The position numbers were made by a program, and so were the translations under genes. The notes under the pieces were generated by a model. It saw only the letters and a list, made by a program, of their open reading frames with translations, did no database searches and was not told where the DNA came from. From positions 174,048 through 238,047 of the IMG/VR virus record IMGVR_UViG_3300024350_000252: a stretch of 64,000 nt of DNA, one strand, 5' to 3'. Of the stretch, positions 1 through 28,743 are shown piece after piece; position 1 is the first letter of the stretch; every line of letters begins with the position of its first letter.

Positions 1-3000
1 GTAACACCGGCAGCACAGATTATTATTTCATCTAGCTATAACGGATCTCCATTGACATTGACTACTGCGTCAGGTTCGATGGGAGTATCAGCTGGTGAAA
101 CTTATTTTGTAGGACAAGCTATTAGATTTAGCGGTACGACATTCGGAAATATACAGACAGGATCAACACCAAAACAAACCTATTGGATCTATTCTGTAGA
201 CGGTCTTAATACTCTAAAGATTTCTACGACACAGTATGGTTCTCCTGTTTCTACTACAGCTACCGGTACTAATGGTCAGTCTACGATCACCGTGACTAGC
301 TTGACTGGTATAGCCTTAGGGTTCCAAGTGACTGGCAATGGTATCGGTAGCGGAGCAACTGTAGTCAGCATAGTAGGCTATGTTGTCACACTCAGTCAAC
401 CTAATACCAGCAATATCACTACAGGAACTGGAGCAATTACATTCAGTTCATATTTTGTACCTCAGACACAGACTGGTTCGATGACTGCTGAAATAGTAGC
501 AGAACCACCAAATGACACATTCTGGGGTAGATTGAATTCAGGCATTAAATGGACTAATTCTTGGGTAACCGACATAGACTATTTCTTAGGTGATGCTGTT
601 CGCTATGGACCAAATAGTTACATCTGTATACAACAACATCATTCATTGACCAGCAACAGACCAGACAATGATGTGACAGGAACTTTCTGGAACTTGTTGG
701 CTAATGGTCAGGAATCATCAGTATTGACCACACAAGGTGATCTAGTTTACTTCGGCGGTTCTGGACCTACAAGATTGCCAATAGGGCAAGATGGTCAAGT
801 GCTGACAGTCAATGGTAATACATTGGCTCCAAATTGGAAGTTCTGGGGCAGCATCGATCAAGTTTATTATGTAGCTACTTCAGGTACAGACAGTGCTTAT
901 CCTATCTATGGTGCTACATTAGACAAACCATGGAAGACTATCAGATATGCTTGCGAACAGATATTAGCAGGACCTAGAAATCCTAATGCTGCTTATCTTA
1001 TAAATGTTAACAGACAGTTCATCCAACGAGAAACTGTAAATTGGATCAACTATCAAATCGCTAACAATATATCTCCTTTCACTACTGGTTTCACTTATGA
1101 TCAAACCAAATGCGAAAGAGATACAGGTTATGTAATCGATGCTTTAGTCTGGGACTTAACACACGGCGGCAATGTGAGATCTAGAGCGGCAGCATTAAGC
1201 TATGTTGGCGGAACATATACTTTATTATCTTCACAGAAAACACAAACCAACGCAGCACTAAATTATGCTATCAATAATGTGTTAGTCGCCGCAGTATTAG
1301 CTAACGCAGCACCTTTCCAAAACTATCAAGTACTAAATGGAGTAGCTGTTGGTTCTCGTATCAATCAAGTTATCAATACAAATTATACTTCAGAAACTGT
1401 ATCATCAGATATTACTGCTTTATTAAAAATAATCACAGATGCTATAACAGCAGGTGTATCTACTAATATTCCTGCTCAGGTACAACCAAATTATACTATC
1501 TTGGCTAAAACTGGAGTATATTATGAAACATTACCTATCGTTGTGCCAGCGTTTACCGCGATAGTAGGAGACGAATTAAGATCTACAAACATACGTCCAG
1601 CTGCTTCGCAAGTAGCTGCTGGTGATGTCACTTACAGTCTAGCAGCATTGGCTTATATCAAGACTATAATCAGCAATGTAGTGACTGGTACCACAGTAAC
1701 TACTAATCAAATCACATATTCACAAGATAAAACACTGCCTTTGGCTACAGGTACTGAAGGAACTACCGTACAGAATCTTGTACAAAATATCATCGACTAT
1801 ATTAATTTCTATATCAATAGCACAGGCAGTGCTCCAGCTATGACTGGTACCAACACACCGGCTAGCACTTACGATCCGTATGCCGCTGCTAGATTGTTAG
1901 AATTGAACAGAAACTTTATCGTAGCTCAAACTAATGCCTATATAGCAGCGACATATCCTGCTTATAGTTACAATGTGGCATCATGTTCTAGGGACGTTAA
2001 TCGTTATATAGATGCTCTTAAATATGATCTAGTCTATACAGGAAATTATAAAACATTAACATACGCAAAACTATATGTCAATGCGGTAACTGGCAGTCTC
2101 TTACAAAATATGTTCTTGGTAAGAAATGCCTGTGGTCTAAGAAATTGTACCGTACAAGGATTGACAGGTACATTAGGATCAGCCAACGCATATGGAACTA
2201 AGAGACCTAGTGCTGGAGCCTATGTCAGCCTAGATCCAGGCTATGGACCAAACGATTCGGATGCTTGGGTAACCACAAGATCTACATATGTACAAAACGT
2301 GACTACATTTGGCACGGCGGCAATCGGTCTTAAGATCGATGGTAATTTACATAACGGTGGCAATAAATCTGTTGTTGCTAACGACTTTACACAGGTCATC
2401 AGCGATGGTATCGGTGTATGGTGTACCAATAATGGGTTGACAGAACTTGTGTCTGTGTTCTCGTATTATGGACACATGGGATACCTAGCAGAAGCTGGTG
2501 GTAAGATACGTGCTACTAACGGTAACTCATCATATGGTGATTACGGTACTGTGTCTGAGGGTGTTGATGCGACAGAAGTTCCGATCACTGCTCAGATTGA
2601 CAATAGAGCATCCGCAGCACAAGTTGGGTTGACAGTACAAAACGGCAATGCTATACAGAGATTAGAATTTACTAATGCTGGTATAAACTATAATAATTCT
2701 GCTACATTTACTTTCAACGGGGCAGGTATTAATGCGGCAGCAGTATTTGACGAAACTAGAGATAATGCTATTTTTGAAGCTAGACAATTACAGTTAGCAG
2801 CAGATGGTTCAGATGGCATGTATGGCGGATCATCATACTATACAGCACAGAACGTTGCCCAGGCGGGCGGTCTATATCAGATCACGCTAGCTGCTACAGA
2901 TAGCCAAACTTCTAGCGGTTATCTGGGAATGAGAATAGTCACTGTATCAGGTACTGGTGCAGCTCAACAGGCTAAGATCATCAACTACAACGCAGGTAAC

Positions 3001-6000
3001 AAGATCGCTCTTGTGGCTAAAGAATCATTCGCAGATATCACAGTTACTGGTAGCACTATCAGTGGTAACACTTTGACTACTACTGCCGCAGAACAAGATA
3101 GATTGTATGCTAACATGCCATTGTATCTTAGCGCAGCTATTGGTGGGTTGAGTGCTAACTCTTTATATTATGTGGTTGGTTCTAGTATCGCTACACCCGG
3201 AACTACTTTCCAAGTTTCAACAGCACCGAGCGGATCTGCTGCTACGATAACAGCTACAACAACAGGACAAAACGTCACATTATATCAAGCAGGTTGGGAA
3301 GGAGCTATCAACGGTACCACTATCACATCACCGGATCCTTCTACATTATATTTGATCGAACCGAGAGTAACATTTGCTGCTCCAGGATTTAAACAAAACG
3401 CTACAGGCACACTACCGACCGTAGCTGTTGGATATAAAGATGGTGTGTTTAGTCAGACAAGATCTACTCATACAGGAGTGTCAGCGAGCGGTGGCGCTGG
3501 TTCAAGCGCAACCTTCAACATTACTAGAGTAGGATTGGTTTATACTGTAACATTAAACAACGGTGGTACGGGCTATGCTGTGGGAAATACTCTAACTATT
3601 TTAGGAACCAGTGTCGACGGTGCTACTCCAAGGAATGACATCACGATAACAGTTACAAAAGTTACAAGTCCTACAGGAGTTATCAGTGCGTTCAGCTCTA
3701 CTGGTTTAGGTAGAGGTGGACAGTTCTTTGCTTTACCAAACAGTGGAGCAACAGGTGCATATTCAAGGGATGGCAGTACATGGACATCTACTACTATCAC
3801 TAACCAATCTTGGGGAACAGTAGCTACTGGTACTATTAGTAACGTGGATTATGTACAAATATTGCCAGGTAGTGGATCGGCTAATTTCCAATACAGCACC
3901 AATGGAGGACAAACGTGGACAAGTTCTACGCTGCCAACTACACAATCATGGACCAGTTCCGCATTTGGTAATGGTGTATTCATGGCAGTGTCCAGCACAT
4001 CTAATACACCTATAACATCATCAAATGGTACGAGCTGGGCTGTTACAGCCGGAAACCTTGGCGCTTTTACTAATTTAGTAGGAGTTGCTTACGGATTGGG
4101 TAGATTTATGGTATTGCCAGGATCAGCAGCTAACACAACAGCATCATACAGTCTCAATAACGGCACTACATTTGTGGCTACGACATTACCTTCCAGCCAG
4201 ACATGGTCTGGTATAGCATATGGTAATGGAAGATTTGTAGCCATAGCGTCAACTAATAGAGCAGGTGCTATCAGCATAGATGGTGTAAACTGGACAGCAG
4301 TAACACTACCGAATGGAACTATGACCAAGATCAGATATGCTCAAGGTCTGTTTATGATGATAACTAGCGGTAGTGCTAATACTGTATGGACATCGCAAGA
4401 TGGTATCAATTGGACTAACAGGACATTTGCTACCAGCGATACGAGAGCATTCCCATTCTTTGGTGATCCAAACAATGTACCAAGCTGGATAGTTCTACCG
4501 TCGAGTGCTACTACTACAGGTATCATAGCAAAAACTGGTGCTACTGCTACAGGCAGAGTTTTAGTAACTAACAACAGTATTTCTCAAACTAGAATCGTTG
4601 AACCTGGTTCGGGATATCCGTTCGGATCTGTAACTAACGTAGGACCTACAACAACTATCACAGTAACCAGCGTATCAGGAACTACTATAACCACTTCAAC
4701 AAACTTGACTACTGCTGGTATACTATCAGATCAACCTATAGTATTCAGCGCAGGATTAGGCAATATCGTCGGCGGCAGTACATATTATGTGTTAACGGCT
4801 AGTGGCACATCGATGACTATTAGCTCTAGCTTACAAGGAACTGCTTTCACTGTAGGCACAGCATCTGGTACTATCACTGGTACTACTGCTAGCGTGATCA
4901 AAGTTGATCAAACTGATAATCTAGTCAATGGTCAACCTGTGAACTTTACCAATTTAGCTGCGGTTGGCTTGTCTACTAATAAAGCATACTATGTGATCAG
5001 CGGTAGTATCACTACTACCAGCTTCAGAGTTTCACAAAATACAGTATCTTCGACAGCGGCAACGCTGACCACACCAGCATCTAGTTTGGTGAATGCTTTT
5101 TATAACGCAGGCGGTGCTATAACTATAACTGATCCGAACCGTGTGTTTGCTGCCCCTATACAAGTAAGAGCTGGATCTAGTGTATTGGCTAATCCTACAT
5201 TTACCAATAGAGGTACTTTATGGACTACAGCTACAACAACAATATCAGGCGACGGTGTTGGAGATATATTCCAACCAGGTCAATATATCTCTATCAAGAA
5301 CATTAGCTCACTGCCAACAGTTGGATCGAATGTGGAATTCGCTTCATTACCGGGACAGTATTTCAAACTAGTTACTACCAGAAACTTGATAGGAACTGGT
5401 CCATATACTGCTACATTCCAGATCAGTCCGTTAATGTCCGTGACAGATTCTCCACCAGATGGCGATGCTATCACTGTAAGAATCAGATATAGCCAAGTGC
5501 GTCTAACTGGACATGATTTTTTGAGCATCGGTACTGGTAACTTTACCAATACAAATTATCCAGGAATACCACTGATCGCTTCTGATTCGGCCAAGCAGAC
5601 CAAAGAGTCCGCCGGAGGTCGCGTGTTCTTTACCAGCACTGACCAAGACGGTAACTTCAACGTTGGTAACTTGTTCTCGGTACAACAGGCTACAGGTACT
5701 GCTACCCTAAATGCTAACGCATTCAATCTAGCAGGACTACAGAGCTTGAGCTTAGGCTCAGTTAACGTGGGAGGTAGCGCAGGCGCTACTATCACTGAAT
5801 TCAGTACAGATCCATATTTCACAGCTAATAGCGATGCTATATTGCCTACTCAACGAGCTATCAAGGCATATGTAGCTTCACAAATTGGTTCTGGATCCAG
5901 TACTTTGAACGTAAATACACTTACTGCTGGTTCGATCTTTGTAAGCGGAAACACCATTACAACCACTACAAACCTCGAAATCAAAGTAACTACAAAATTG

Positions 6001-6057
6001 AATTTCATCAAGGGTGTGGATGGTTATCCAGTGGCCTTGAATTTGTTCTTAACATAA
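1..6057 (+). CDS. Giant tail fibre/virion protein, 5'-truncated: pectin-lyase-like beta-helix, Asp-box propeller and Ig-like repeats
   Basis: Frame 1 is open from base 1, so the TTG at 52 is not the true start. Thr/Gly/Ser-rich. Motifs: YYVATSGTD..GATLDKPWKTIRYAC and KTGVYYETLPIVVP..IVGDELRS (beta-helix); six SxD/NGxxW Asp-boxes; C-terminal SDAILPTQRAIKAYV typical of T4-like structural proteins. Confidence 0.85.
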   Translation, partial: VTPAAQIIISSSYNGSPLTLTTASGSMGVSAGETYFVGQAIRFSGTTFGNIQTGSTPKQTYWIYSVDGLNTLKISTTQYGSPVSTTATGTNGQSTITVTSLTGIALGFQVTGNGIGSGATVVSIVGYVVTLSQPNTSNITTGTGAITFSSYFVPQTQTGSMTAEIVAEPPNDTFWGRLNSGIKWTNSWVTDIDYFLGDAVRYGPNSYICIQQHHSLTSNRPDNDVTGTFWNLLANGQESSVLTTQGDLVYFGGSGPTRLPIGQDGQVLTVNGNTLAPNWKFWGSIDQVYYVATSGTDSAYPIYGATLDKPWKTIRYACEQILAGPRNPNAAYLINVNRQFIQRETVNWINYQIANNISPFTTGFTYDQTKCERDTGYVIDALVWDLTHGGNVRSRAAALSYVGGTYTLLSSQKTQTNAALNYAINNVLVAAVLANAAPFQNYQVLNGVAVGSRINQVINTNYTSETVSSDITALLKIITDAITAGVSTNIPAQVQPNYTILAKTGVYYETLPIVVPAFTAIVGDELRSTNIRPAASQVAAGDVTYSLAALAYIKTIISNVVTGTTVTTNQITYSQDKTLPLATGTEGTTVQNLVQNIIDYINFYINSTGSAPAMTGTNTPASTYDPYAAARLLELNRNFIVAQTNAYIAATYPAYSYNVASCSRDVNRYIDALKYDLVYTGNYKTLTYAKLYVNAVTGSLLQNMFLVRNACGLRNCTVQGLTGTLGSANAYGTKRPSAGAYVSLDPGYGPNDSDAWVTTRSTYVQNVTTFGTAAIGLKIDGNLHNGGNKSVVANDFTQVISDGIGVWCTNNGLTELVSVFSYYGHMGYLAEAGGKIRATNGNSSYGDYGTVSEGVDATEVPITAQIDNRASAAQVGLTVQNGNAIQRLEFTNAGINYNNSATFTFNGAGINAAAVFDETRDNAIFEARQLQLAADGSDGMYGGSSYYTAQNVAQAGGLYQITLAATDSQTSSGYLGMRIVTVSGTGAAQQAKIINYNAGNKIALVAKESFADITVTGSTISGNTLTTTAAEQDRLYANMPLYLSAAIGGLSANSLYYVVGSSIATPGTTFQVSTAPSGSAATITATTTGQNVTLYQAGWEGAINGTTITSPDPSTLYLIEPRVTFAAPGFKQNATGTLPTVAVGYKDGVFSQTRSTHTGVSASGGAGSSATFNITRVGLVYTVTLNNGGTGYAVGNTLTILGTSVDGATPRNDITITVTKVTSPTGVISAFSSTGLGRGGQFFALPNSGATGAYSRDGSTWTSTTITNQSWGTVATGTISNVDYVQILPGSGSANFQYSTNGGQTWTSSTLPTTQSWTSSAFGNGVFMAVSSTSNTPITSSNGTSWAVTAGNLGAFTNLVGVAYGLGRFMVLPGSAANTTASYSLNNGTTFVATTLPSSQTWSGIAYGNGRFVAIASTNRAGAISIDGVNWTAVTLPNGTMTKIRYAQGLFMMITSGSANTVWTSQDGINWTNRTFATSDTRAFPFFGDPNNVPSWIVLPSSATTTGIIAKTGATATGRVLVTNNSISQTRIVEPGSGYPFGSVTNVGPTTTITVTSVSGTTITTSTNLTTAGILSDQPIVFSAGLGNIVGGSTYYVLTASGTSMTISSSLQGTAFTVGTASGTITGTTASVIKVDQTDNLVNGQPVNFTNLAAVGLSTNKAYYVISGSITTTSFRVSQNTVSSTAATLTTPASSLVNAFYNAGGAITITDPNRVFAAPIQVRAGSSVLANPTFTNRGTLWTTATTTISGDGVGDIFQPGQYISIKNISSLPTVGSNVEFASLPGQYFKLVTTRNLIGTGPYTATFQISPLMSVTDSPPDGDAITVRIRYSQVRLTGHDFLSIGTGNFTNTNYPGIPLIASDSAKQTKESAGGRVFFTSTDQDGNFNVGNLFSVQQATGTATLNANAFNLAGLQSLSLGSVNVGGSAGATITEFSTDPYFTANSDAILPTQRAIKAYVASQIGSGSSTLNVNTLTAGSIFVSGNTITTTTNLEIKVTTKLNFIKGVDGYPVALNLFLT

Positions 6058-6070: not shown

Positions 6071-6394
6071 ATGGCAACAGGAGTTTTGGGCACATACGAT
6101 CATACCGCAGGAGCTTGGTTTGCTCTATATACGGTCCCAGCCACTACATTTTCGGTGGTCAGCTTGTCAATGTGTAACAGAAGCAATCAAGCTGTGAACG
6201 TAAGAGTAGCAGTTTCTACAAGTTCAGTTAGCCCTGCTAACGGCGAAATCATCGAATTTGATACAGAAGTATTAGGAAAAGGTGTGCTAGAAAGGACCGG
6301 TATCGTGATGGATGCCGGTAAAGTGCTTCTAGTTTACTCAAATGCTGCGGGCGTTAGCTCGGTAGCATTTGGAATCGAAACATCAACTGTATAA
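6071..6394 (+). CDS. Small virion structural protein (107 aa)
   Basis: SD GGAG; beta-rich LYTVPATTFSVVSLSMCNR..EIIEFDTEV pattern seen beside T4-like fibre genes. Confidence 0.65.
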   Translation: MATGVLGTYDHTAGAWFALYTVPATTFSVVSLSMCNRSNQAVNVRVAVSTSSVSPANGEIIEFDTEVLGKGVLERTGIVMDAGKVLLVYSNAAGVSSVAFGIETSTV

Positions 6395-6420: not shown

Positions 6421-6753
6421 ATGGGAAGATATCTTACAACTACAGGAACAGCAGGCAATACGGTCAGAGAGATCTCAGGAGCCTACTCTGCAGTAGTCAA
6501 CGACAGAATTTTAGCTAATACTGCTAGTAGCGGTTTTACTATAACACTGCCTGCTAACAGCACATTATTTTTGAATGATACTATTCAGATCATTGACGTA
6601 GCAGGAAACGCAGCTATTAACAACATCACTATCGCTAGAAACAGCTCTAAGATCAACAATATCGCAGACGATTTCGTGATTGACGTTAACTATGCTGTGA
6701 TCACGTTGATCTATACAGGATCAACATATGGTTGGATCGTAGCCAACGCTTAA
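6421..6753 (+). CDS. Tail-fibre-associated protein (T4 gp34-like module, 110 aa)
   Basis: FTITLPAN..DTIQIIDVAGNAAINNITIARN..ITLIYTGSTYGW motif; ATAAATA late promoter at 6394-6400. Confidence 0.7.
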   Translation: MGRYLTTTGTAGNTVREISGAYSAVVNDRILANTASSGFTITLPANSTLFLNDTIQIIDVAGNAAINNITIARNSSKINNIADDFVIDVNYAVITLIYTGSTYGWIVANA

Positions 6754-6771: not shown

Positions 6772-7743
6772 ATGCCAACCTCGCTTAAAGCAACTAACGG
6801 TTTTAAAAGTCAGGCTTTCTGGAATCAGGAAACTAATCTAGAAAGAGGGACTATACATGTTTACACCCCAGGTAACGACTTCCAAAGTTTCCCCTGCTGC
6901 GGATGTTTCGTCGCACCTAGCTGTGGTACAGCAGTCATAGAAATCTGGGGAGCTGGCGGAAGCGGTTCTCGTATGTGCTGCTGTGGTGGCGGCATGCCAG
7001 GAAATTCAGGTGCCTATGCCAAAAAGACTATCAGAATGGGCGCAGGCTGTTATATCTATTTCTATGTAGGCATGGCCTGCGGTAACGCAGACTCTTTATG
7101 TTATAGAGGCTGTTCAGAAGCTACCTGTCTATGTTGGTTTGGTAACCAAGGACTTAGTGGCTGTATGTGCGCACAAGGTGGACAGGGCGGTATCAGTTAC
7201 TGTTCTACAGGTACTTCTATGTACTGCTGCTATGCGGCCAATAGTTGGCCAACTACAAACTTAGGCAATGGTTGCGGAATCGTCTGTAATAATTGCTCAG
7301 GATCATATCAAGCATGTGCCTACGGTGGAGACGTTAACCTCTGTAGTAGGATTTCCTGCGTGGTCTATCTAGGCTGCTTGCCCAGCTGCGTATGTAACAT
7401 CAATTGGAGCATGGCTATCCCCGCAGGACAATTTTCAAAATGCGGAGGCTATGTCAGCTACACGACAGAAAATAACCAAGACTACGCTAACTGGGTCGGT
7501 GTAGGACAACATAATCATATCATGGCACTGAATGCTGCCAGTCGTTGGCCACAACAGGGTATGCCATGGGCATACTGCTGGGGGTTTGGCGGTGGTTGCG
7601 GCTGTTACGAAAACGAAGGCTGTACAGGATTTGTTCCACCAGGACATCCTGGAATGGGACCGCTTCCATGTCCAGATGTGAGAGATCATGCTAGAAAAGG
7701 CGGCAGTGGCATGGTAAGAATTAAATTTATACCGGGAACATAA
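6772..7743 (+). CDS. Cys/Gly-rich adhesin-like protein, paralogue 1
   Basis: EIWGAGGSG..GNSGAYAKK and terminal GGSGMVRIKF, a glycine-rich phage adhesin frame; about 33 Cys in 323 aa. Confidence 0.7.
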   Translation: MPTSLKATNGFKSQAFWNQETNLERGTIHVYTPGNDFQSFPCCGCFVAPSCGTAVIEIWGAGGSGSRMCCCGGGMPGNSGAYAKKTIRMGAGCYIYFYVGMACGNADSLCYRGCSEATCLCWFGNQGLSGCMCAQGGQGGISYCSTGTSMYCCYAANSWPTTNLGNGCGIVCNNCSGSYQACAYGGDVNLCSRISCVVYLGCLPSCVCNINWSMAIPAGQFSKCGGYVSYTTENNQDYANWVGVGQHNHIMALNAASRWPQQGMPWAYCWGFGGGCGCYENEGCTGFVPPGHPGMGPLPCPDVRDHARKGGSGMVRIKFIPGT

Positions 7744-7744
7744 G

Positions 7745-8725
7745 ATGCCAACTTCGATTAGAACATGGACACAAACTAGACTAAACTTCATCGCAGATAA
7801 TGAAGAAAACTTAGAACGAGGTTCGATCTATCTGTTCAGCGGTTCTGCTGAAAGAACGAATTTTAGTAACGGTGGTTTTTGCTGGGTAGCACCTGCTACC
7901 GGACAGGCTATCGTAGACATTTGGGGAGCTGGTGGTAGCGGTGCTCGTATGTGCTGCTGCGGTGGCGGTCTTCCGGGCAATCCAGGAGCATTTGCTAGAA
8001 AATGTCTATGTATACAGTCTGGCTGCTGGATCTGCGGATTTACTGGTATGAGCTGCGGCTCACCAGATCTTTGCTTTAGAGGTTGTTCGGAATATTCAGG
8101 TATCTGCTGGCAAGCTAGCGGTACAAACGGTTGTGTATGCGCCCAAGGTGGCCGCGGAGGCACTAGCTACTGTTCTACAGGAACTTCTCTCTATTGCTGT
8201 TTTACAGCTGGTAACTTCTGTACTACACTAATCAACGCTAACTGTGGTGTTGTCTGTAACTATGGTTCAGGCACAGCCAGCTGCTGCGCACAAGCATTCG
8301 GTGGCGACATTAACTGTTTTGGCGGTTTTAGTTGTGTACTTTTCGCAGGTTGTCAACCAAGTTGTCCATGTTCAACAATCTATCACATAGCTACACCTCC
8401 ATACTATTATTCAACATGCGGTGGAGTGATCACTTACACCTCTGAAGGTGATAGCGGAGCAGCTAACTGGTCGGGCGGTACATTGACAGGATACATACAC
8501 GGTATGTCAGTCATGGGTCGTCAACCACATCACGGTACACCTCCAGAGCAATCTTGCTGGACTGGCGGTCGTACATGCGGATGTTACGAAGGTCAAGGAT
8601 GTATTCCTTTTGTACCAGCAGGATTCCCAGGACCTGGTCCTTTGCCTTGCCCAGATGTTCGCGATATGGCATTCCGTGGCGGTCATGGTGCTGTAAGAAT
8701 CAAATTCATAGCCGCAACAGAATAA
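7745..8725 (+). CDS. Cys/Gly-rich adhesin-like protein, paralogue 2
   Basis: Same motifs as paralogue 1 (WGAGGSGARMCCCGGG, CSTGTSLYCC, PCPDVRD, GGHGAVRIKF); about 33 Cys. Confidence 0.7.
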   Translation: MPTSIRTWTQTRLNFIADNEENLERGSIYLFSGSAERTNFSNGGFCWVAPATGQAIVDIWGAGGSGARMCCCGGGLPGNPGAFARKCLCIQSGCWICGFTGMSCGSPDLCFRGCSEYSGICWQASGTNGCVCAQGGRGGTSYCSTGTSLYCCFTAGNFCTTLINANCGVVCNYGSGTASCCAQAFGGDINCFGGFSCVLFAGCQPSCPCSTIYHIATPPYYYSTCGGVITYTSEGDSGAANWSGGTLTGYIHGMSVMGRQPHHGTPPEQSCWTGGRTCGCYEGQGCIPFVPAGFPGPGPLPCPDVRDMAFRGGHGAVRIKFIAATE

Positions 8726-8737
8726 GGTGAAATAAGA

Positions 8738-9721
8738 ATGGCACAATCGCTTAATAGCTTAGTAAGATTAAAAACTCCAGATAGGAATGAAGATAACCTT
8801 GAATTAGGCCAGATCTTTGTGTTCAGTCCTGGCACCATGTATACCAACTTCTGTTATAACGGTGGTTCTGGTTTCTGTTGGAAAGCTCCAGGAACAGGTA
8901 CAGCAGTTATCGAAATGTGGGGAGCTGGTGGTAGCGGTGCTAAGATGTGCTGCTGCGGCGGCGGAACTCCAGGAAATGCAGGTGCTTATGTAAGAAAAAC
9001 TATTTCGGTTAACTCTAGCACATATGTTTGCGGTTGTACCGGATTTTCCTGTGGTAACTCAGACTCATTATGCTATAGAGGTTGCTCAGATCCTTCGGGA
9101 TTAAACTGGGTGAATGGTACTGGTGCGATAGGAGCTACCAGTGGCTGCTTATGTGCCCAAGGTGGTAACGGTGGCCTTAGCTGGTGTTCTACAGGTACTT
9201 CTATGTATTGTTGTATGGGGGCTAGCGGATGGTGTACCACTTATCTAGGTACAGGTTGCGGTGTGGTCTGTAATTACTGTAATGGTATGTGGATTGCCTG
9301 CGGGTTTGGTGGAGACATTAACTGCTGCGGTCGATTCAGCTGTATTACCTATTATGGTTGTCTACCTAGCTGTATTTGTTTGTTCCAATATCATATTGCT
9401 GTACCGGCTAATTTCTTCTCATGCGGTTGCGGTAGTATGGCTAATTTCACAACAGAAAATGATAATAGGCATTCTAACTGGTCAGGCCAAGGTGTTAACC
9501 AACAGATGAACGCATTAGGAGCATTGAGTAGATCGCCGAGACAAGGTATTCCGCAAAGCTACTGCTGGCGTTCAGATCGTAAGTGTGGATGTTATAATAT
9601 GCAGGGCTGTATGAACTATAACCCACCTGGTGTGGGCGGTGTCGGACCAGCTCCGTGCCCAGACGTCCGCGATCACGCTATGCGTGGTGGAATGGGCGCA
9701 GTGCGTATTAGATTCTTTTGA
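8738..9721 (+). CDS. Cys/Gly-rich adhesin-like protein, paralogue 3
   Basis: WGAGGSGAKMCCCGGG, CSTGTSMYCC, PCPDVRD, GGMGAVRIRF; about 33 Cys. Confidence 0.7.
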   Translation: MAQSLNSLVRLKTPDRNEDNLELGQIFVFSPGTMYTNFCYNGGSGFCWKAPGTGTAVIEMWGAGGSGAKMCCCGGGTPGNAGAYVRKTISVNSSTYVCGCTGFSCGNSDSLCYRGCSDPSGLNWVNGTGAIGATSGCLCAQGGNGGLSWCSTGTSMYCCMGASGWCTTYLGTGCGVVCNYCNGMWIACGFGGDINCCGRFSCITYYGCLPSCICLFQYHIAVPANFFSCGCGSMANFTTENDNRHSNWSGQGVNQQMNALGALSRSPRQGIPQSYCWRSDRKCGCYNMQGCMNYNPPGVGGVGPAPCPDVRDHAMRGGMGAVRIRFF

Positions 9722-9742: not shown

Positions 9743-10393
9743 ATGAGAAAGTTATTTCAAATTACATTGCCCGACGAACCATACAAAACAGCCACTACTA
9801 AAAATCAAAAAGTAGACTGTATGTATGTGGGCCCACGATATATGGTACTTTGTATCGATAATACTACTGATTTAGTAAAATATGTAGGTAGACGTGCTGA
9901 CACGATCGAAGAAGCAGAATTAGATAATCACGTAGAAGATGATCATTATCATGTTTTGCTAGATGCTTCTGTGAATACATTTGAAGCAGCATATCTTACA
10001 GGACAGTACGAACACGGTGAGATAGAGAATTATACCGAAACGTTACCTACAAAAAACGCAGCAGGTGAGTTCGAAACTTATACATATCACTATGATGATT
10101 ACAGAGGTATTATAGGACAGATTTATTGGAATCAGGTTCTTTATTACAATCCTTCAAATAAAACTTTCAAAGAACCCGCAAGAAGAGAACATGCTACTGA
10201 CTGGGATCAAGTAGTAAAAACTACTAAAGATGGGGCTGCTGAAATACGTAAAATGTTAGAAGCTAATGATTATTTTCCAGCTCAATTAGCAGTTATCAAT
10301 GAATATCTAGATTGGGTTGATACTTTTGAAGAAAAGTATGCTGATGTAGATCATTGGAAAGTTCCATTTCCACCATATCCAAACATGGCTTAA
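9743..10393 (+). CDS. Hypothetical protein, possible tail-fibre assembly chaperone
   Basis: Acidic 216 aa directly after the adhesin triplet; C-terminal HWKVPFPPYP resembles the W..P end of fibre chaperones; GATAAATA at 9720-9727 and SD GAGG. Confidence 0.5.
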   Translation: MRKLFQITLPDEPYKTATTKNQKVDCMYVGPRYMVLCIDNTTDLVKYVGRRADTIEEAELDNHVEDDHYHVLLDASVNTFEAAYLTGQYEHGEIENYTETLPTKNAAGEFETYTYHYDDYRGIIGQIYWNQVLYYNPSNKTFKEPARREHATDWDQVVKTTKDGAAEIRKMLEANDYFPAQLAVINEYLDWVDTFEEKYADVDHWKVPFPPYPNMA

Positions 10394-10474: not shown

Positions 10475-11431
10475 ATGGAACAGCAACAACCAACACAGCG
10501 ATCAAAAGCCTTTTTCTTAAATGGCGGCGCTGGCAGAGTTCTATGCTCTATCCCGGCATTAGAAAAATACGAAGAAGAATCAGGGGATAAAGATTTCATC
10601 ATAGTGTGCGAAGGTGGTACGGAAGTGTTCAAAGGACATCCTACACTAGACAGCAGAACATATGACAATTGGCACAAGAATCTTTTTGTAGAAAAAATCA
10701 AAGATCGCGATTGTGTAACACCCGAGCCTTATAGAGTTTGGGAATATTACAATCAAAAATGCGATCTAGCACAGGCATTTGATATCGAAATCAATAGAAA
10801 AGGCATTAGAGAATTACCTAAACCTAATCTAAGATTGAGCAAAGACGAATTGTTAGTAGGTAGACAGCTAATCGCCGACGTCAAGAAAAAAATCAAGAAA
10901 GAAAAAATCATAGTTTTCCAACCATTTGGCCGAGGCATAGACTATGTCGATGGTTCTTTTGTAGATCGTACTAACAGAAGCTTTGAATTTAAAGATGTAA
11001 AATCAATCATACGAAAACTTCAAGAAGCCAATTACGGTGTCGTAATGATGGGAGAAATGCGGCTCGATCTTACCAGCGAAAAACTAAAAGATGATGTAGC
11101 AGCACCAGAAAACACTACCATAAGACAGTGGGCAGCTATCATCAAATACGCAGATCATTTCTTGGGCTGTGACAGTGTGGGTCAACACCTAGCCTATATC
11201 GTAGGCAAACAATCTACTGTAGTATTCGGATCTACATATCCAGTTAACGTGTCTTACCCTAATTGTAAGTACATGAATCTTCTAGATATGGCTGAAGAAA
11301 TAAGAGAATATAGTCCTATCAGGATTACACTAGACGAACGTATTGATAGAAAACTAGAAGGAGTTATGTCCATGACTCCGGAAATTGTTGATTATGTAGT
11401 GAATGCTGTTTTAGGGAAGAAACAAAAATGA
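10475..11431 (+). CDS. GT9-like (heptosyltransferase-type, GT-B fold) glycosyltransferase
   Basis: N-terminal NGGAGRVLCSIPAL and C-terminal AAIIKYADHFLGCDSVGQHLA..STVVFGST match the GT9 pattern. Confidence 0.7.
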   Translation: MEQQQPTQRSKAFFLNGGAGRVLCSIPALEKYEEESGDKDFIIVCEGGTEVFKGHPTLDSRTYDNWHKNLFVEKIKDRDCVTPEPYRVWEYYNQKCDLAQAFDIEINRKGIRELPKPNLRLSKDELLVGRQLIADVKKKIKKEKIIVFQPFGRGIDYVDGSFVDRTNRSFEFKDVKSIIRKLQEANYGVVMMGEMRLDLTSEKLKDDVAAPENTTIRQWAAIIKYADHFLGCDSVGQHLAYIVGKQSTVVFGSTYPVNVSYPNCKYMNLLDMAEEIREYSPIRITLDERIDRKLEGVMSMTPEIVDYVVNAVLGKKQK

Positions 11432-13242
11432 GTGAAAGCAAGAATCCAATGTTAAACACTGGCTGGATCGCAGCCATAGCTAGAGGTCATAATTCAGGTA
11501 TCTGTCTATTCAAAGACGGAGAGATCGTTTTTTCTGCTGAAGAAGAAAGATTTACCAGACAGAAATACGACGGCGGTCCGTATGCTTCGATGATGAAAAT
11601 CAAAGAATACACAGACAAAATCGATTATCTAGTAGTAGCACACACACAAAAATTAAATGAAACTGCGGGTCGTGTTGACTATTCTGGTGATGATGTATAC
11701 ACAGGATTAGCTCGTAAGATGAATCTTATTGATCGAAAAGCTGATTTACATAATCATCCTCAAGTAATTGACCTTAGTTTTATGCATCATAAGCTACACG
11801 CTGCTTGTGCGTTTTATCGTTCGGGATTTGATGATGCTGTAGCATTGATTGTAGATGGTGCCGGTACTTTCATCCAGATGTCTTATGCTAACCAACCTAT
11901 ATGGGTATGGGAAGTAGAAAGTATCGTAGACTGTTCATATCCATCAAAGTTCAAAACTTTGTACAAGCATTATGGTACTAGAGAGCCTATTGCTGGTGCT
12001 ATCGAAACTAGCATTCCGTCTGATCAGTACGGTGAAGTAAATGATTTTCATGCTGCCGTATTATCAGACAGAGCAGGTATCGTTAAGACTTACGAAGCAG
12101 TCACAGAATATTGTGGGTTCAGTGCTATCGAAGCAGGCAAGACTATGGGATTGTTCCCATACGGACAGAAAAACGATAAGATTCCTCCATTGTTTGATTT
12201 TACATCTAAGGTACCCTTATCAAACAGAAATGTTATAGTTCCAGCATATCCTTCGTCTGCTAGAGTCAACGCACAACTATTTGATTATTTGGACGAAGAA
12301 ATTCCAGAAGGAGTAGATCCTACTAAATTACAAAGTCGTAGAGATTTGGCTTATGCTTGTCAAACACAGACTCAAGACCAAGTAGTGAGATTGATACGAA
12401 AAGCTGTAGAAATTAGCGGCAAGAAGAAAGTAGTGATCAGCGGTGGCTATGGTCTTAACTGTGTGGCCAATTATCATTATCTAGAAGCATTGAAAGACGG
12501 GGGTATCGAAATTTATGTAGAACCTATCTCTAACGATGCCGGAACAGCTATGGGAGCAGGACTGATGTTTTGGCATGCCATGACTGACAACACAGACATA
12601 CAGAAACTAGATACCCTTTACCTCGGACCTAAGTACGAATATACACAGGAAGAAATTGCGGAAAAGGTCAAGTACGCAGGTGGCGAGTTGACAGACGCTA
12701 CCAATGAACAAGTAGTAGAACTGCTACGTTCTAAGAATATCGTGACGATCTTCCAAGGTAGATCAGAAAACGGTCCGAGGGCCCTAGGCAATAGAAGTGT
12801 TTTATTTGATCCTACATTTCCAGATGGAAAGGATTTTGTAAACACTGTCAAACGTCGAGAATATTTCCGTCCTTTTGCGGGCAGCATTATACATGATGTT
12901 GTACATGATTGGTTTGATCTGCGCGGCATGGATGAAAGTCCTCACATGATGTATGCTGTAAACTGTAAGCCCGGAATCGCAGAAAAGATACCCAGCATCA
13001 TACACGTAGACGGTACCTGTAGAATACAGACTGTAAAACGTGAGCAAAATCCTCATTATTATGATTTGATCAAGGCTTTTTATACAGCTACAGGAATTCC
13101 TATCCTGTTTAATACCAGCTTTAATTTGGGCGGTGATCCGCTAGTAGAAACACTAGATGATGCTATAGATACCTTGATACGCAGCGATATAGAGTATCTG
13201 TACCTGCCAGAATACGGCAAACTGATCAAAATAGCCAACTGA
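11428..13242 (+). CDS. Carbamoyltransferase, NodU/CmcH/TobZ family (full length, Kae1-like plus YrdC-like domains)
   Basis: EEERFTR, HHKLHAACAF, VDGAG, GKTMGL, GGYGLNCVAN, NDAGTAMGA, GPRALGNRS, KRREYFRPFA, HVDGTCRIQTV, NTSFN; ATGA overlap with the GT gene. Confidence 0.95.
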   Translation: MSESKNPMLNTGWIAAIARGHNSGICLFKDGEIVFSAEEERFTRQKYDGGPYASMMKIKEYTDKIDYLVVAHTQKLNETAGRVDYSGDDVYTGLARKMNLIDRKADLHNHPQVIDLSFMHHKLHAACAFYRSGFDDAVALIVDGAGTFIQMSYANQPIWVWEVESIVDCSYPSKFKTLYKHYGTREPIAGAIETSIPSDQYGEVNDFHAAVLSDRAGIVKTYEAVTEYCGFSAIEAGKTMGLFPYGQKNDKIPPLFDFTSKVPLSNRNVIVPAYPSSARVNAQLFDYLDEEIPEGVDPTKLQSRRDLAYACQTQTQDQVVRLIRKAVEISGKKKVVISGGYGLNCVANYHYLEALKDGGIEIYVEPISNDAGTAMGAGLMFWHAMTDNTDIQKLDTLYLGPKYEYTQEEIAEKVKYAGGELTDATNEQVVELLRSKNIVTIFQGRSENGPRALGNRSVLFDPTFPDGKDFVNTVKRREYFRPFAGSIIHDVVHDWFDLRGMDESPHMMYAVNCKPGIAEKIPSIIHVDGTCRIQTVKREQNPHYYDLIKAFYTATGIPILFNTSFNLGGDPLVETLDDAIDTLIRSDIEYLYLPEYGKLIKIAN

Positions 13243-14889: not shown

Positions 14890-15438
14890 ATGACTACAAA
14901 CAGCAAAAGATTAAGCTCAGATTATGGATTTAAAAGTCCTGGATTTTCTGTAGATTCAAACGGAAACATCACCGGTACCAGTTTAGGTATAAAAGGTGTA
15001 AGTATCATCGATAGCACAGGAGCATTGACATCCAACGTCAAAATTACTTCTATCGAAGTCCTGGGATCTTTACAAAATCTCGATGTCAATGGCAATGTAA
15101 ACATACGTAATGGCAGTGTTTCTAGACTGTCAGTTAACGCAGGAAGAGTAGTGATCAAAAGTGGTACTACTGGCACTATCGACAATATGAATATCGGTAC
15201 TATAACACCTGGAACAGTATCAACATATAATCTCAGTATAGTCAATAATGGCTCTAGTCCAGGTAATCTCAATGTCAGTGGCGCAGATATAGTAGCTAAT
15301 AATGCTACAATTTCGGGTAATATAATTGCCACAGGCTATATCTTGTTAGCCAATAGTCCAACCGCAGCCACTCACGCAGTTAGAAAAGACTATGTGGATT
15401 CTAGCGCGATTACATACGCAGTAGCTTTTGGAGCATAA
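14890..15438 (+). CDS. Fibre-like virion protein (182 aa)
   Basis: C-terminal PTAATHAVRKDYVD fibre motif; ATAAATA at 14864-14870. Confidence 0.65.
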   Translation: MTTNSKRLSSDYGFKSPGFSVDSNGNITGTSLGIKGVSIIDSTGALTSNVKITSIEVLGSLQNLDVNGNVNIRNGSVSRLSVNAGRVVIKSGTTGTIDNMNIGTITPGTVSTYNLSIVNNGSSPGNLNVSGADIVANNATISGNIIATGYILLANSPTAATHAVRKDYVDSSAITYAVAFGA

Positions 15439-22003: not shown

Positions 22004-23278
22004 ATGATACTAGTAATCGGTGATCTAATCTTAGACGTTTTCCAAAAAGGCAAAAGCCGCAGACTCAGCCCCGAAGCTCCTGTGCCTGTAATAACAGGTA
22101 TGTCGAGAAAAATCTATCCGGGAGGTGCTGCTAATTTAGCACTCAATCTAGCCGACATGGGAATAATAACTACAATCCGTGGACAGCTAGGTCGTGATGA
22201 AGAAGCTTATATATTAGACAATATGATCACACAGCATCCAAATATCAGATCCGCTATAGGATTTCAAGATGATGCTAACACTACTGTAAAAACTAGGATA
22301 ATTGCTAATGGACAGCAGATAGCTAGATTAGACGTAGACGGTATCTATTATCCAATTTCTATATTAGAAGTTTTTGAAAGAGAAGAAATAGAATTTGATA
22401 TAGTTGTAGTCAGCGATTATGATAAAGGTGTTATAGGAGATCTTTCTCAAGAACTTAAAATTTTAAAAGATCGAGGTATACGCACACTCATAGATCCTAA
22501 GAAAGATTTTGATCATTACAAAAATGCTTGGTTGATAAAACCTAATCTAAAAGAGTTTTTTGATTTTGTAGGACCAGCAGAAGATCCAGATCATATGTAT
22601 GATCTAGGTAGTAAAGCTCTTAGAAAATATAATATAGAATATATGTTAGTGACATTAGGTCATCAAGGTATGGCACTGATATCACAACGAGAAATACAAC
22701 ATTTTCCTGCTCTTGAGTGCGATGTTTATGATATCACTGGCGCTGGTGATTCTGCCCTAGCAGGATTAGTCTATGGACTTAATAAAGGAAAGTCTTTAAT
22801 AGACAGTATAGAATTAGCGCAAAAAGCTGCTAGCGTAGCCATTTCACATCATGGTGTTTATAGAGTAACTGAAAAAGAATTAAAAAATAAAACAGTATTT
22901 GCTAATGGTGTCTTCGATATACTACATGCTGGGCATATAAAATTGTTAGAACAAGCACGTAGATTAGGTGATCGATTAATAGTTGGTATCAATTCAGATA
23001 CCAGTGTTAAAAAATTAAAAGGCGATAACCGTCCAATCAACGACGAAAAAACAAGAGCACATACATTAAAACAATTTAGTTGTGTAGATGATGTGATTGT
23101 TTTTGACGAAGATACTCCTTATGACTTGATAAAAAAATTAAAACCTGATATAATAGTCAAGGGAGGCGATTATACTGTAGACCAGGTAGTAGGAAAAGAA
23201 TTGGTAGATGAAGTAGTGATAATACCTCTCGAAGAAGGATACAGTACTACTAAAATAATAGGAAATATAAATGGATAG
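22004..23278 (+). CDS. hldE: Bifunctional heptose-7-phosphate kinase / heptose-1-phosphate adenylyltransferase
   Basis: GDLILD..RLSPEAPVPV..GGAANLA, DITGAGD (PfkB kinase); NGVFDILHAGH..GINSDTSVKKLKG..RPIN (nucleotidyltransferase). Confidence 0.92.
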   Translation: MILVIGDLILDVFQKGKSRRLSPEAPVPVITGMSRKIYPGGAANLALNLADMGIITTIRGQLGRDEEAYILDNMITQHPNIRSAIGFQDDANTTVKTRIIANGQQIARLDVDGIYYPISILEVFEREEIEFDIVVVSDYDKGVIGDLSQELKILKDRGIRTLIDPKKDFDHYKNAWLIKPNLKEFFDFVGPAEDPDHMYDLGSKALRKYNIEYMLVTLGHQGMALISQREIQHFPALECDVYDITGAGDSALAGLVYGLNKGKSLIDSIELAQKAASVAISHHGVYRVTEKELKNKTVFANGVFDILHAGHIKLLEQARRLGDRLIVGINSDTSVKKLKGDNRPINDEKTRAHTLKQFSCVDDVIVFDEDTPYDLIKKLKPDIIVKGGDYTVDQVVGKELVDEVVIIPLEEGYSTTKIIGNING

Positions 23279-23660
23279 GATCACAGGAAAAGTAGATAAA
23301 GGTTGGGGCATGGAATTGATCTGGGCCTCAAATGATGAATATTGCGGAAAGATATTAGTATTCAATAACGCTGGTTCTAAGTTTTCGATGCATTTCCACA
23401 AAGACAAAGACGAAACTTGGTTTGTCAATCAGGGAAGATTTAAAGTGCGTTGGATAGATACTAAGACAGCAGTTTTATACGAAAAAGAACTTAACGAGGG
23501 AGATGTATGGCATAATCCTAGATTACAACCTCATCAGTTAGAAGCTATGGTTGGCAATTCATCTATCACTGAAGTAAGTACAGCCGACAGTCCAGATGAC
23601 AACTATCGTATTATACCCGGAGACAGTCAAGCTGAAATAATGCCCAAGGAAGAAAAATGA
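23271..23660 (+). CDS. Cupin protein (sugar-phosphate isomerase-like)
   Basis: KGWGMELIW..SMHFHKDKDETWFV..QPHQLEA..EVST cupin motifs; overlaps both neighbours. Confidence 0.8.
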   Translation: MDRITGKVDKGWGMELIWASNDEYCGKILVFNNAGSKFSMHFHKDKDETWFVNQGRFKVRWIDTKTAVLYEKELNEGDVWHNPRLQPHQLEAMVGNSSITEVSTADSPDDNYRIIPGDSQAEIMPKEEK

Positions 23661-27938: not shown

Positions 27939-27971
27939 AGTATTATATTTACCGCCACGATAAATAACAGT

Positions 27972-28736: not shown

Positions 28737-28743
28737 ACCACAC

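What the first reader, a model, noticed from the sequence alone, without database searches (positions are those of the whole stretch)
6772..9721. Three equal-length paralogues with about 33 Cys each in a glycine-rich adhesin frame
Seen: 323, 326 and 327 aa, each about 10% Cys (hand count 33 each). Shared blocks are MCCCGGG, CGxxD(S)LC(Y/F)RGCS, GCxCAQGG, CSTGTSxYCC, GCxPSCxC, CWx4CGCY and PCPDVRD, separated by variable segments. Known: the WGAGG...GGxGxVRI frame is typical of glycine-rich phage adhesins, which are normally Cys-poor, and virions assemble in a reducing cytoplasm. Inference: a metal-cluster-stabilised or post-lysis disulfide-locked tip. The matched lengths suggest a heterotrimer or alternative host-range tips.
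Basis: partly seen in the sequence, partly recalled or inferred. Interest (0 to 1): 0.72.

Follow-up and report, generated by a model that had tools for sequence, protein, structure and literature searches.

The report
Cysteine-rich phage tail-fibre tip triplet
Three adjacent genes of a giant marine phage encode look-alike tail-fibre tip proteins with a known fold (TNF-like plus glycine-rich), but one residue in ten is a strictly conserved cysteine; this variant is uncharacterised, and whether the cysteines form disulfide staples or bind metal is still open.

Summary
Three tandem + strand genes (6772-7743, 7745-8725, 8738-9721) encode proteins of 323, 326 and 327 aa. Each has exactly 33 Cys (10%, against a window background of 1.3%) and 17% Gly, and they are 50-54% identical to each other.

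They belong to a marine viral family of about 220 clusters at 50% identity. Every full-length member is Cys-rich, and about 21-24 Cys columns are near-invariant. There is no Pfam hit and only a weak hit to phrog_4205, of unknown function.

An AlphaFold2 model (pLDDT 83) matches the trimeric short fibre gp24 of cyanophage Pam3 (Z 15.7) and the ALK/LTK TNF-like plus glycine-rich domains. The genes sit in a conserved fibre module that Prochlorococcus phage P-SSM2 shares; its two homologues have 36 Cys each.

Exactly three copies are kept in every sufficiently complete relative, and two lineages appear to have reached three separately. A trimer of the three proteins is confidently predicted (0.83 against 0.02 for controls). 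Homotrimers could not be tested.

The cysteines lie inside each subunit. Their counts show no even-number bias, they turn over singly, and there is no conserved CxxC motif, no invariant His and no phage Erv or DsbA. Disulfide versus metal therefore stays unresolved. This is a new variant of a known kind.

The parts
6772..7743 (+). Cys-rich TG-fold paralogue 1 (323 aa, 33 Cys); belongs to the orthologous group of first-position genes
   Evidence: orthologous clade with SH-aLRT 99
7745..8725 (+). Cys-rich TG-fold paralogue 2 (326 aa, 33 Cys); its start codon lies one base after the stop codon of paralogue 1
   Evidence: orthologous clade with SH-aLRT 95
8738..9721 (+). Cys-rich TG-fold paralogue 3 (327 aa, 33 Cys); this is the protein that was modelled
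   Evidence: AlphaFold2 pLDDT 82.9, pTM 0.80; Z 15.7 to Pam3 gp24; clade support 77
52..6057 (+). Giant fibre-like protein (2001 aa) that heads the conserved module
   Evidence: Conserved upstream in 63 related loci; segments are 36-49% identical to the P-SSM2 tail fiber protein PSSM2_301; no Pfam hit
6071..6394 (+). 107-aa protein, always found between the giant fibre gene and the Cys-rich genes
   Evidence: phrog_11338 tail fiber protein, E 1.4e-6; 41% identical to PSSM2_302; present in 61 loci
6421..6753 (+). 110-aa protein resembling the C-terminal parts of tail, fibre and baseplate proteins
   Evidence: phrog_31104 at E 4e-18 plus several tail PHROGs; present in 61 loci
9743..10393 (+). 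216-aa conserved downstream partner (beta domain plus C-terminal helical hairpin); a candidate fibre chaperone or adaptor, unproven
   Evidence: Present in 55 loci and duplicated in some; AlphaFold2 pLDDT 96; no convincing PDB match, best Z 6
10475..11431 (+). GT9-like (heptosyltransferase-like) protein, part of the conserved module
   Evidence: phrog_8954 at E 1e-135; weak PF01075 hit; 43% identical to PSSM2_307
11428..13242 (+). Nol-like carbamoyltransferase, part of the conserved module
   Evidence: phrog_1601 at E 2e-167; 48% identical to PSSM2_308

Best explanation
The three genes encode the subunits of short, trimeric receptor-binding fibres or fibre tips of a jumbo T4-like marine myovirus.

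Each protein has:
- a short N-terminal docking helix followed by a conserved E-x-N-L-E-x-G motif;
- a TNF-like beta-sandwich fused to a glycine-rich extended-strand lattice. This is the 'TG' architecture of cyanophage Pam3 gp24, of a Bxb1 tail-tip protein and of the ALK/LTK ectodomain.

In this subfamily about half of the usual glycine content is missing, and about 24 conserved cysteines per chain form an intra-subunit framework. The spacing is CC(C), CxC and CxxxC, which puts the side chains on the same face of a beta-strand.

Inferred, not shown: the protein folds in the reducing cytoplasm, possibly helped by the conserved 216-aa neighbour. No recognisable phage sulfhydryl oxidase is present. 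Most core cysteines would therefore become cross-strand or cross-sheet disulfide staples only once the virion is in oxic seawater, hardening the exposed tip. Some cysteines stay unpaired.

Three distinct chains are needed per virus. They act either as one A:B:C trimer or as three kinds of homotrimer at different sites; the evidence does not decide between these.
For: Shown:
- Fold. AlphaFold2 pLDDT is 82.9 and pTM 0.80. The top Foldseek PDB hits are the Pam3 fibre, the ALK/LTK TG domains and the Bxb1 tail tip. VIA-align gives Z 15.7 and 15.2 to Pam3 gp24, with 190 residues aligned at 3.0 A rmsd, Z 11.9 to Bxb1 and Z 8-10 to ALK/LTK. The ESM Atlas neighbours carry PF21722 Gly_rich_2.
- What Pam3 gp24 is. 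[quoted passage not shown] Pam3 virions contain many disulfides, seen by cryo-EM and mass spectrometry (PMC9942802, PMC9608196).
- Context. The order giant fibre protein, 107 aa, 110 aa, Cys-rich genes, 216 aa, GT-like gene, carbamoyltransferase is conserved in more than 50 loci and in Prochlorococcus phage P-SSM2. There PSSM2_304 and PSSM2_306 have 36 Cys each and follow the annotated tail fiber protein. hhalign of the family against PSSM2_306 gives probability 92%, E 7.5e-7.
- Second site. The solo copy in the '2+1' lineage sits directly before a baseplate-wedge-like protein.
- Trimer. ipSAE is 0.83, 0.83 and 0.86 in three runs, against a best control of 0.02. In the tool's calibration this mark was reached by 58 of 80 solved complexes and 2 of 110 mismatched pairs.
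- Three copies. Every record long enough to judge holds three, including two CheckV-100% genomes. There are six clean orthologous clades.
- Cysteines are intrachain. Only 6 of 99 Cys lie in the predicted interface, against about 19 expected.
- Cysteine conservation.
- No Erv1/Alr or DsbA in the window's record or in two complete relatives, and no thioredoxin or glutaredoxin in the window's record.
- No conserved CxxC and no invariant His.
Against: - No virion proteomics exists for any family member. In Sullivan et al. 2010, T4-GC 299 and 301 are hypothetical proteins unique to P-SSM2, and P-SSM2 virions were not analysed.
- PF21722 does not hit these proteins, and a sequence search of the PDB finds nothing. 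The fold assignment therefore rests on a predicted model.
- Against full disulfide pairing, Cys counts show no even-number bias: 182 even against 157 odd over 339 sequences, and 14 even against 18 odd per locus triplet.
- Accessory Cys are gained and lost 20-38 times per column. After phylogenetic control they do not change in pairs.
- The N-terminal helix is much shorter than the docking bundle of Pam3 gp24.
- The complex predictor cannot tell a heterotrimer from homotrimers of 50%-identical paralogues, and it may score high from likeness to the solved Pam3 trimer.
Confidence: 0.55

Rival explanations
1. Metal-thiolate scaffold. The conserved cysteines bind Zn, Fe or Cu in all-Cys sites or metallothionein-like clusters. 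That would let a 10%-Cys protein fold in a reducing cytoplasm, and the virion tip would carry the metal.
For: - Cys counts show no even-number bias.
- Accessory Cys turn over singly.
- No phage oxidase was found.
- CC and CxC motifs are typical of metallothioneins (general knowledge).
- Metal ions in T4-type fibre tips, and the 'Ferrojan Horse' idea for marine phages, are precedents (bioRxiv 10.1101/674382 and PMC11705849, found).
Against: - There is no conserved CxxC knuckle and no invariant His.
- The known fibre metal sites are His-based.
- The i/i+2/i+4 spacing of Cys fits beta-strand faces, which is equally what cross-strand disulfides need.
- No metal-binding family was hit.
Confidence: 0.3
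2. Obligate A:B:C heterotrimer. One copy of each paralogue assembles around a pseudo-threefold axis, which would explain why exactly three genes are kept. This can be combined with either chemistry.
For: - Exactly three copies are present in every record that is complete enough to judge.
- The 3-tandem and '2+1' lineages hold separate triplets. All '2+1' copies lie on one side of a branch with SH-aLRT 96.7, so three appears to have been reached or kept twice.
- The genes are tightly packed, with gaps of 1 and 12 bases.
- The predicted heterotrimer scores ipSAE 0.83 against 0.02 for controls.
Against: - Residues specific to each orthologous group are few: 1 at the 80% threshold and 13 at 60%. 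They are not enriched at the predicted interface (odds ratio about 1.2, not significant).
- In the '2+1' lineage the third gene is about 22.6 kb away, next to a baseplate-wedge gene. That suggests a separate attachment site.
- P-SSM2 has only two copies.
- Homotrimers were not modelled.
Confidence: 0.35
3. Monomeric gp38-type adhesins. As with T2/S16 gp38, each protein caps the tip of a trimeric fibre (the 2001-aa protein) through its N-terminal segment, and the three paralogues are alternative or additive host-range tips.
For: - The genes lie directly downstream of the giant fibre gene and two small adaptor-like proteins.
- The short N-terminal helix resembles the short attachment helices of gp38 more than the long bundle of Pam3 gp24.
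- The Pam3 authors describe S16 gp38 as architecturally similar to gp24.
Against: - S16 gp38 (6F45) is not among the structural matches.
- A trimer is confidently predicted.
- A strict copy number of three with 1:1:1 orthology is not what freely exchangeable host-range cassettes usually show.
- There is no hypervariable tip segment; column entropy is only moderately raised at residues 211-270.
Confidence: 0.12
4. Not a virion part. The proteins are intracellular Cys-rich proteins, for example for metal or redox buffering during infection, that merely share a beta-sandwich fold.
For: No proteomic evidence places them in virions. Family names are all 'hypothetical'.
Against: - They are embedded in structural modules in two different genomic arrangements.
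- The closest structural relatives are all fibre or tail-tip proteins.
Confidence: 0.05

Closest known systems
Cyanophage Pam3 tail fibre gp24 (PDB 7YPX, 7YFW)
   Same: - Best structural match: Z 15.7 and 15.2, with 190 residues aligned at 3.0 A.
- Same domain order: N-terminal helix, TNF-like sandwich, glycine-rich lattice.
- gp24 is a trimer, and a trimer is predicted here too.
- The Pam3 virion uses disulfides.
   Different: - Sequence identity is 16-17%, and neither HMM searches nor a PDB sequence search detect the relationship.
- The gp24 glycine-rich domain is 39% Gly. Here Gly is 17% and Cys 10%.
- The N-terminal helix here is about 10 residues, not a long bundle.
- The protein is about 75 residues longer.
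- There are three paralogues instead of one gene.
P-SSM2 PSSM2_304 and PSSM2_306 (T4-GC 299 and 301; phrog_4205), also in P-SSM5, S-SSM7, S-SSM6a, Sf-FS3 and S-CAM3
   Same: - Same Cys-rich, Gly-rich type: 36 Cys in 355-356 aa.
- Same motifs: WGAGG, CCC, GAY.
- Same syntenic fibre module with a GT-like gene and a carbamoyltransferase.
   Different: - Only about 30% identical, over residues 31-158.
- Two copies, separated by a 225-aa gene.
- They carry a longer N-terminal region of about 90 residues.
- The host phage is a cyanomyovirus of about 252 kb, whereas the window's terminase is closest to PA5oct-like jumbo phages.
- Function equally unknown.
Canonical Gly_rich_2 (PF21722) phage fibre proteins, e.g. 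Syn9 gp38 and gp39
   Same: Same predicted fold class. They also occur as tandem paralogues just downstream of a fibre gene.
   Different: They are Cys-poor (0.8-1.8%) and richer in Gly (22-23%). They hit PF21722, whereas the window proteins do not.
ALK/LTK TG (TNF-like plus glycine-rich) ectodomain
   Same: Shared supradomain fold, Z 8-10.
   Different: It is a eukaryotic receptor domain that binds cytokines. Identity is 15-18%. There is no functional kinship.
Salmonella phage S16 / T2 gp38 adhesin
   Same: It has a polyglycine-rich receptor-binding tip downstream of the long fibre gene. The Pam3 authors cite it as architecturally similar.
   Different: It is a monomer capping gp37, and it is not recovered among the structural matches here.

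Membership tests
TG supradomain (TNF-like + glycine-rich; Pam3 gp24 / ALK-LTK / Gly_rich_2 superfamily) | Beta-sandwich fused to an extended-strand glycine-rich lattice (3D fold) | tested here: met
   Predicted model only. Z is 15.7 to Pam3 gp24 and 8-10 to ALK/LTK. Foldseek E 3e-5.
TG supradomain (TNF-like + glycine-rich; Pam3 gp24 / ALK-LTK / Gly_rich_2 superfamily) | Sequence match to Pfam PF21722 (Gly_rich_2) or PF12810 above the gathering score | tested here: not met
   No Pfam family at E up to 1. PF21722 finds nothing in the whole 238-kb record, although it does find Syn9 gp38 and gp39.
TG supradomain (TNF-like + glycine-rich; Pam3 gp24 / ALK-LTK / Gly_rich_2 superfamily) | Many GGGGxGG-type glycine-rich motifs (about 39% Gly in the Pam3 domain) | tested here: inconclusive
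   Only 17% Gly overall. The recognisable motifs are WGAGGSG, CCCGGG, AQGGxGG and RGGxGAVRI. Several lattice strands appear to carry Cys instead of Gly.
Pam3 gp24-like trimeric short fibre | Trimer | tested here: met
   Prediction only. The trimer of the three paralogues scores ipSAE 0.83 against a best control of 0.02; in calibration 58 of 80 solved complexes and 2 of 110 mismatched pairs reached the mark. The homotrimer was not run.
Pam3 gp24-like trimeric short fibre | Long N-terminal alpha-helical bundle that docks on the baseplate wedge | tested here: inconclusive
   Only a helix at residues 3-11 is predicted. The conserved N-terminus and residues 15-42 lie in the predicted interface.
Pam3 gp24-like trimeric short fibre | Dedicated downstream chaperone (gp25: beta-sandwich plus C-terminal helices) | tested here: inconclusive
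   The 216-aa neighbour has a beta domain plus a helical hairpin. It has no fold match above Z 6, and none to gp25.
Pam3 gp24-like trimeric short fibre | Presence in the virion | not testable with these tools
   No proteome of a carrier phage was found.
phrog_4205 (unknown function) | HMM match | tested here: met
   E-values are 1.9e-10, 2.6e-5 and 1.8e-10 for the three proteins. The same PHROG finds PSSM2_304 and 306.
Disulfide-rich extracellular-type domain | Even number of Cys, with Cys gained and lost in pairs | tested here: not met
   182 even against 157 odd. 14 even against 18 odd per triplet. No paired changes after phylogenetic control.
Zinc-ribbon / rubredoxin-type or His-based fibre metal site | Conserved CxxC knuckles or invariant His ligands | tested here: not met
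   Conserved spacings are CCC, CC, CxC and CxxxC. There is no invariant His in 78 sequences. Metallothionein-like all-Cys clusters are not excluded.
S16/T2 gp38 adhesin | Structural match to the gp38 polyglycine sandwich (6F45) | tested here: not met
   It is not among the Foldseek or VIA-align matches. A weak or missing match does not prove the folds differ.

The most novel reading that the evidence does not exclude
A heterotrimeric fibre tip in which the polyglycine lattice of the TG fold has been rebuilt as a cysteine lattice holding several metal ions per chain (Zn, Fe or Cu). Abundant marine jumbo phages and some cyanophages would then carry a thiolate-bound trace-metal load on their receptor-binding tips. 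The requirement for three different chains would have evolved twice.
Probability: 0.12. Interest if true: 0.85.

Novelty: new variant of a known kind. Interest (0 to 1): 0.55.

Why it matters
Receptor-binding tips decide which hosts a phage can infect. The TG or polyglycine tip is one of the few such architectures understood at atomic level.

- **An undescribed subfamily.** It keeps the fold but replaces much of the glycine with about 24 invariant cysteines. It is widespread in ocean viromes (Tara and others) and present in cultured Prochlorococcus and Synechococcus phages.
- **An assembly problem.** It raises the question of how a 10%-Cys protein folds in a reducing cytoplasm without a phage oxidase.
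- **A redox or metal-dependent step.** It offers a testable case of redox- or metal-dependent maturation of virions in seawater.
- **A stoichiometry puzzle.** The strict, apparently twice-derived set of three paralogues needs explaining.
- **Why it is tractable.** P-SSM2, P-SSM5 and S-SSM7 are in culture, so the questions can be addressed at the bench.

Tried and rejected
- **Cultured-phage searches with the window sequences.** Megablast and tblastn against cultured phage records found nothing, even at E 10. The cultured relatives were reached only through phrog_4205 and P-SSM2.
- **Pfam and PDB sequence searches.** Both were empty.
- **Literature searches.** Searches for Cys-rich or Gly-rich phage fibre proteins and for virion proteomes of carrier phages gave nothing specific to this family. 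Sullivan 2010 lists the P-SSM2 homologues only as hypothetical proteins.
- **Paired gain and loss of cysteines as a disulfide signature.** Raw correlations were seen, for example columns 169 and 209 with phi 0.85. They vanished under phylogenetic control.
- **Group-specific interface residues as a heterotrimer signature.** No enrichment was found.
- **The 216-aa neighbour as a Pam3 gp25-like chaperone.** It gives a confident model but no fold match.
- **Phage-encoded Erv1, DsbA, thioredoxin or glutaredoxin.** None was found.
- **'Equal length and 33 Cys each' as a family rule.** This was rejected.
- **S-S distances in the model.** I could not read them, because coordinates are not exposed. I also could not run a metal-ligand or homotrimer complex job, because the cap is one job.
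Full report
**1. Observation**

The region holds three head-to-tail + strand ORFs: 6772-7743, 7745-8725 and 8738-9721. They encode 323, 326 and 327 aa. Each protein has exactly 33 Cys (10.1-10.2%) and 54-57 Gly (about 17%). Cys is 1.3% in the window's long ORFs. These three are the top three of 47 ORFs of at least 150 aa, and the next highest is 2.6%.

The three proteins are 50-54% identical to each other. All the quoted motifs are present in all three. The one correction is that the spacer written CWx4CGCY is five residues long. The genes are packed with gaps of 1 and 12 bases.

**2. The host genome and the module**

The window is the last 64 kb of a 238-kb IMG/VR record, which CheckV rates 67% complete. 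It encodes T4-type sheath, tube, terminase, UvsX, gp32-like and helicase genes. The large terminase is closest (54%) to the Pseudomonas jumbo phage PA5oct, followed by Atu_ph07 and CBB. A relative with the same module is a CheckV-complete genome of 364 kb.

The three genes lie in a conserved module, in this order:
- a 2001-aa fibre-like protein;
- a 107-aa protein (tail-fibre PHROG);
- a 110-aa protein (tail-protein PHROGs);
- the Cys-rich genes;
- a 216-aa protein;
- a GT9-like protein;
- a carbamoyltransferase;
- further on, a 2172-aa protein.

This order recurs in more than 50 of 76 related viral contigs.

**3. The family**

A word-indexed search found 347 homologues. All come from marine or aquatic metagenomes, Tara included, and all are called 'hypothetical'. 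An exhaustive profile search of 1.84 billion representatives found only 223 clusters, about 100 of them full-length. Every full-length member has 19-47 Cys.

Across 339 sequences, 21 columns are at least 90% Cys and 24 are at least 80% Cys. Within each orthologous group Cys is the most conserved residue class.

No Pfam model hits these proteins. The only library hit is phrog_4205, of unknown function, at E about 1e-10.

**4. Cultured relatives**

Searching the P-SSM2 genome with phrog_4205 finds two genes, PSSM2_304 and PSSM2_306. They are 356 and 355 aa long, with 36 Cys each. They sit in a syntenic module: tail fiber protein, two small ORFs, Cys-rich gene, 225-aa ORF, Cys-rich gene, GT-like gene, carbamoyltransferase, heptose genes.

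The flanking genes are homologous to those of the window: 41% for the 107-aa protein, 43% for the GT-like protein and 48% for the carbamoyltransferase, with segments of the fibre protein at 36-49%. hhalign of the family profile against PSSM2_306 gives probability 92% and E 7.5e-7 over residues 31-158. The alignment shares the WGAGG, CCC and GAY motifs.

P-SSM5, S-SSM7, S-SSM6a and Sf-FS3 also carry relatives. The best BFVD structural match is an S-CAM3 protein. In Sullivan et al. 2010 the two P-SSM2 genes are hypothetical proteins unique to P-SSM2, and no virion proteome covers them.

**5. Fold**

AlphaFold2 with a 78-sequence alignment gives pLDDT 82.9 and pTM 0.80. The top Foldseek hits in the PDB are the cyanophage Pam3 fibre, the ALK/LTK TG domains and the Bxb1 tail tip. 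VIA-align gives:
- Z 15.7 and 15.2 to Pam3 gp24, with 190 residues aligned at 3.0 A;
- Z 11.9 to Bxb1;
- Z 8-10 to ALK/LTK;
- Z about 4 to generic TNF/C1q domains.

The viral, AlphaFold DB and ESM Atlas libraries return 'glycine-rich domain-containing', tail-fibre and minor-tail proteins.

[quoted passage not shown] It needs a chaperone, gp25, and is disulfide-linked to the baseplate wedge (PMC9942802, PMC9608196).

The proteins nevertheless fail the Pfam sequence definition and have about half the usual glycine content. Canonical cyanophage members, Syn9 gp38 and gp39, do hit PF21722 and are Cys-poor, at 0.8% and 1.8%. The cysteine richness therefore marks out this subfamily.

**6. Why three**

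In 3-tandem loci the first, second and third genes each form a clade, with IQ-TREE SH-aLRT support of 99, 95 and 77, and gene order is conserved.

A second phage lineage has two tandem genes plus a solo gene about 22.6 kb away. The solo gene lies after the head-gene cluster and directly before a baseplate-wedge-like protein of 1412 aa.

Copy number is three in 4 of 5 such '2+1' records; the fifth is only 24% complete. It is also three genes in 5 of 5 3-tandem records, two of which CheckV rates 100% complete.

All copies of the '2+1' lineage lie on one side of a branch with support 96.7. Either the triplet arose twice or it was homogenised early in each lineage. In both cases three distinct chains are under selection.

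'33 Cys each' and near-equal length are peculiar to this window.

**7. Oligomer**

The complex predictor places the three paralogues in one trimer. ipSAE is 0.83, 0.83 and 0.86 in three runs, against a best control of 0.02. In the tool's calibration the mark was reached by 58 of 80 solved complexes and 2 of 110 mismatched pairs. Those counts hold only roughly here, because my own alignments were used.

This supports trimerisation of the Pam3 gp24 kind. It cannot separate a heterotrimer from homotrimers of paralogues that are 50% identical. Residues specific to each orthologous group are few and are not enriched at the predicted interface. P-SSM2 has only two copies. I therefore leave the choice between one A:B:C trimer and three kinds of homotrimer open.

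**8. The cysteines**

- They are depleted from the predicted subunit interface: 6 of 99, against about 19 expected. The framework is therefore intrachain.
- Conserved spacings are CCC, CC, CxC and CxxxC, which put side chains on the same face of a beta-strand. There is no conserved CxxC and no invariant His.
- Cys counts show no even-number bias, per chain (182 against 157) or per triplet (14 against 18).
- Accessory Cys are gained and lost often, and not in pairs once phylogeny is controlled.
- The window's record holds no Erv1/Alr, DsbA, thioredoxin or glutaredoxin. Two complete relatives hold no Erv1/Alr or DsbA.

These data exclude a classical fully paired disulfide knot and a classical zinc-ribbon or His site. 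Two readings remain:
- (a) most core Cys form staples oxidatively after release, with some left free;
- (b) all-Cys metal-thiolate sites.

I favour (a) slightly. The reasons are the strand-face spacing, the roughly 5 A strand spacing of the TG lattice, which suits disulfides (inference), and the documented disulfides in Pam3 virions. I could not inspect model coordinates or run a metal docking job.

**9. Neighbour**

The conserved 216-aa protein gives a very confident model (pLDDT 96) with a beta domain and a C-terminal helical hairpin. That recalls the domain plan of Pam3 gp25. No solved structure matches above Z 6, however, so its role as chaperone or adaptor is only a conjecture.

**10. Verdict**

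The finding is real and non-random. It is best filed as a Cys-rich variant of the TG-fold phage fibre-tip family, shared by a clade of marine jumbo myoviruses and a few cyanomyoviruses, and it has not been characterised experimentally.

Still hypotheses are the chemistry (metal or disulfide) and the stoichiometry (heterotrimer or separate trimers).

Noticed in passing
window 10475-13242 and 22004-24523: Sugar-modification genes sit between two giant fibre-like proteins: a GT9-like heptosyltransferase, a Nol-like carbamoyltransferase, a heptose kinase/adenylyltransferase fusion and a nucleotide-sugar epimerase. The set is syntenic with P-SSM2 genes 307-313. It may glycosylate or carbamoylate virion proteins or host surface glycans.
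   Followed up: partly
window 15446-21964: A second giant ORF (2172 aa) has no Pfam hit. It is conserved downstream of the module in 59 loci and shares short segments with the 2001-aa protein.
   Followed up: partly
window 14890-15438: A 182-aa protein has a sub-threshold bactofilin-like hit (PF04519, E 0.0016). This could reflect a beta-helical fibre segment rather than a cytoskeletal protein.
   Followed up: no
window 25162-26616 (-) and 29831-33229 (+): Two different sheath-type genes are present: a 484-aa protein hitting tail sheath and sheath-stabiliser PHROGs, and a 1132-aa sheath protein. There are also two tube-like genes, at 33291-33932 and 34003-35121.
   Followed up: no
L016, L024, L026, L029, L035, L048-L050, L057, L058, L062, L063, L079: The 216-aa downstream protein is itself duplicated, as two tandem paralogues, in a subset of related phages.
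   Followed up: partly
L078 (G009:C1:105232-106407) and L077: In these relatives the middle paralogue lies in a longer frame of about 422 aa. The family match is split in two (residues 1-129 and 115-319), which suggests an insertion or a partial internal duplication.
   Followed up: no
L004 (IMGVR_UViG_3300024500_000049): A separate 42-kb viral contig is 100% identical to the window over the whole module. The same virus was therefore assembled independently.
   Followed up: no
window 58000-64000: GC content rises from about 0.36 to 0.48 at the end of the window, which is also the end of the record.
   Followed up: no
L089 (Syn9 27931-32327): Syn9 also has a run of glycine-rich paralogues after its fibre gene: gp36 (35% Gly), gp38 and gp39, the last two annotated 'tail fiber assembly'. 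Tandem TG-type paralogues next to fibre genes may be a general feature of cyanophages.
   Followed up: partly
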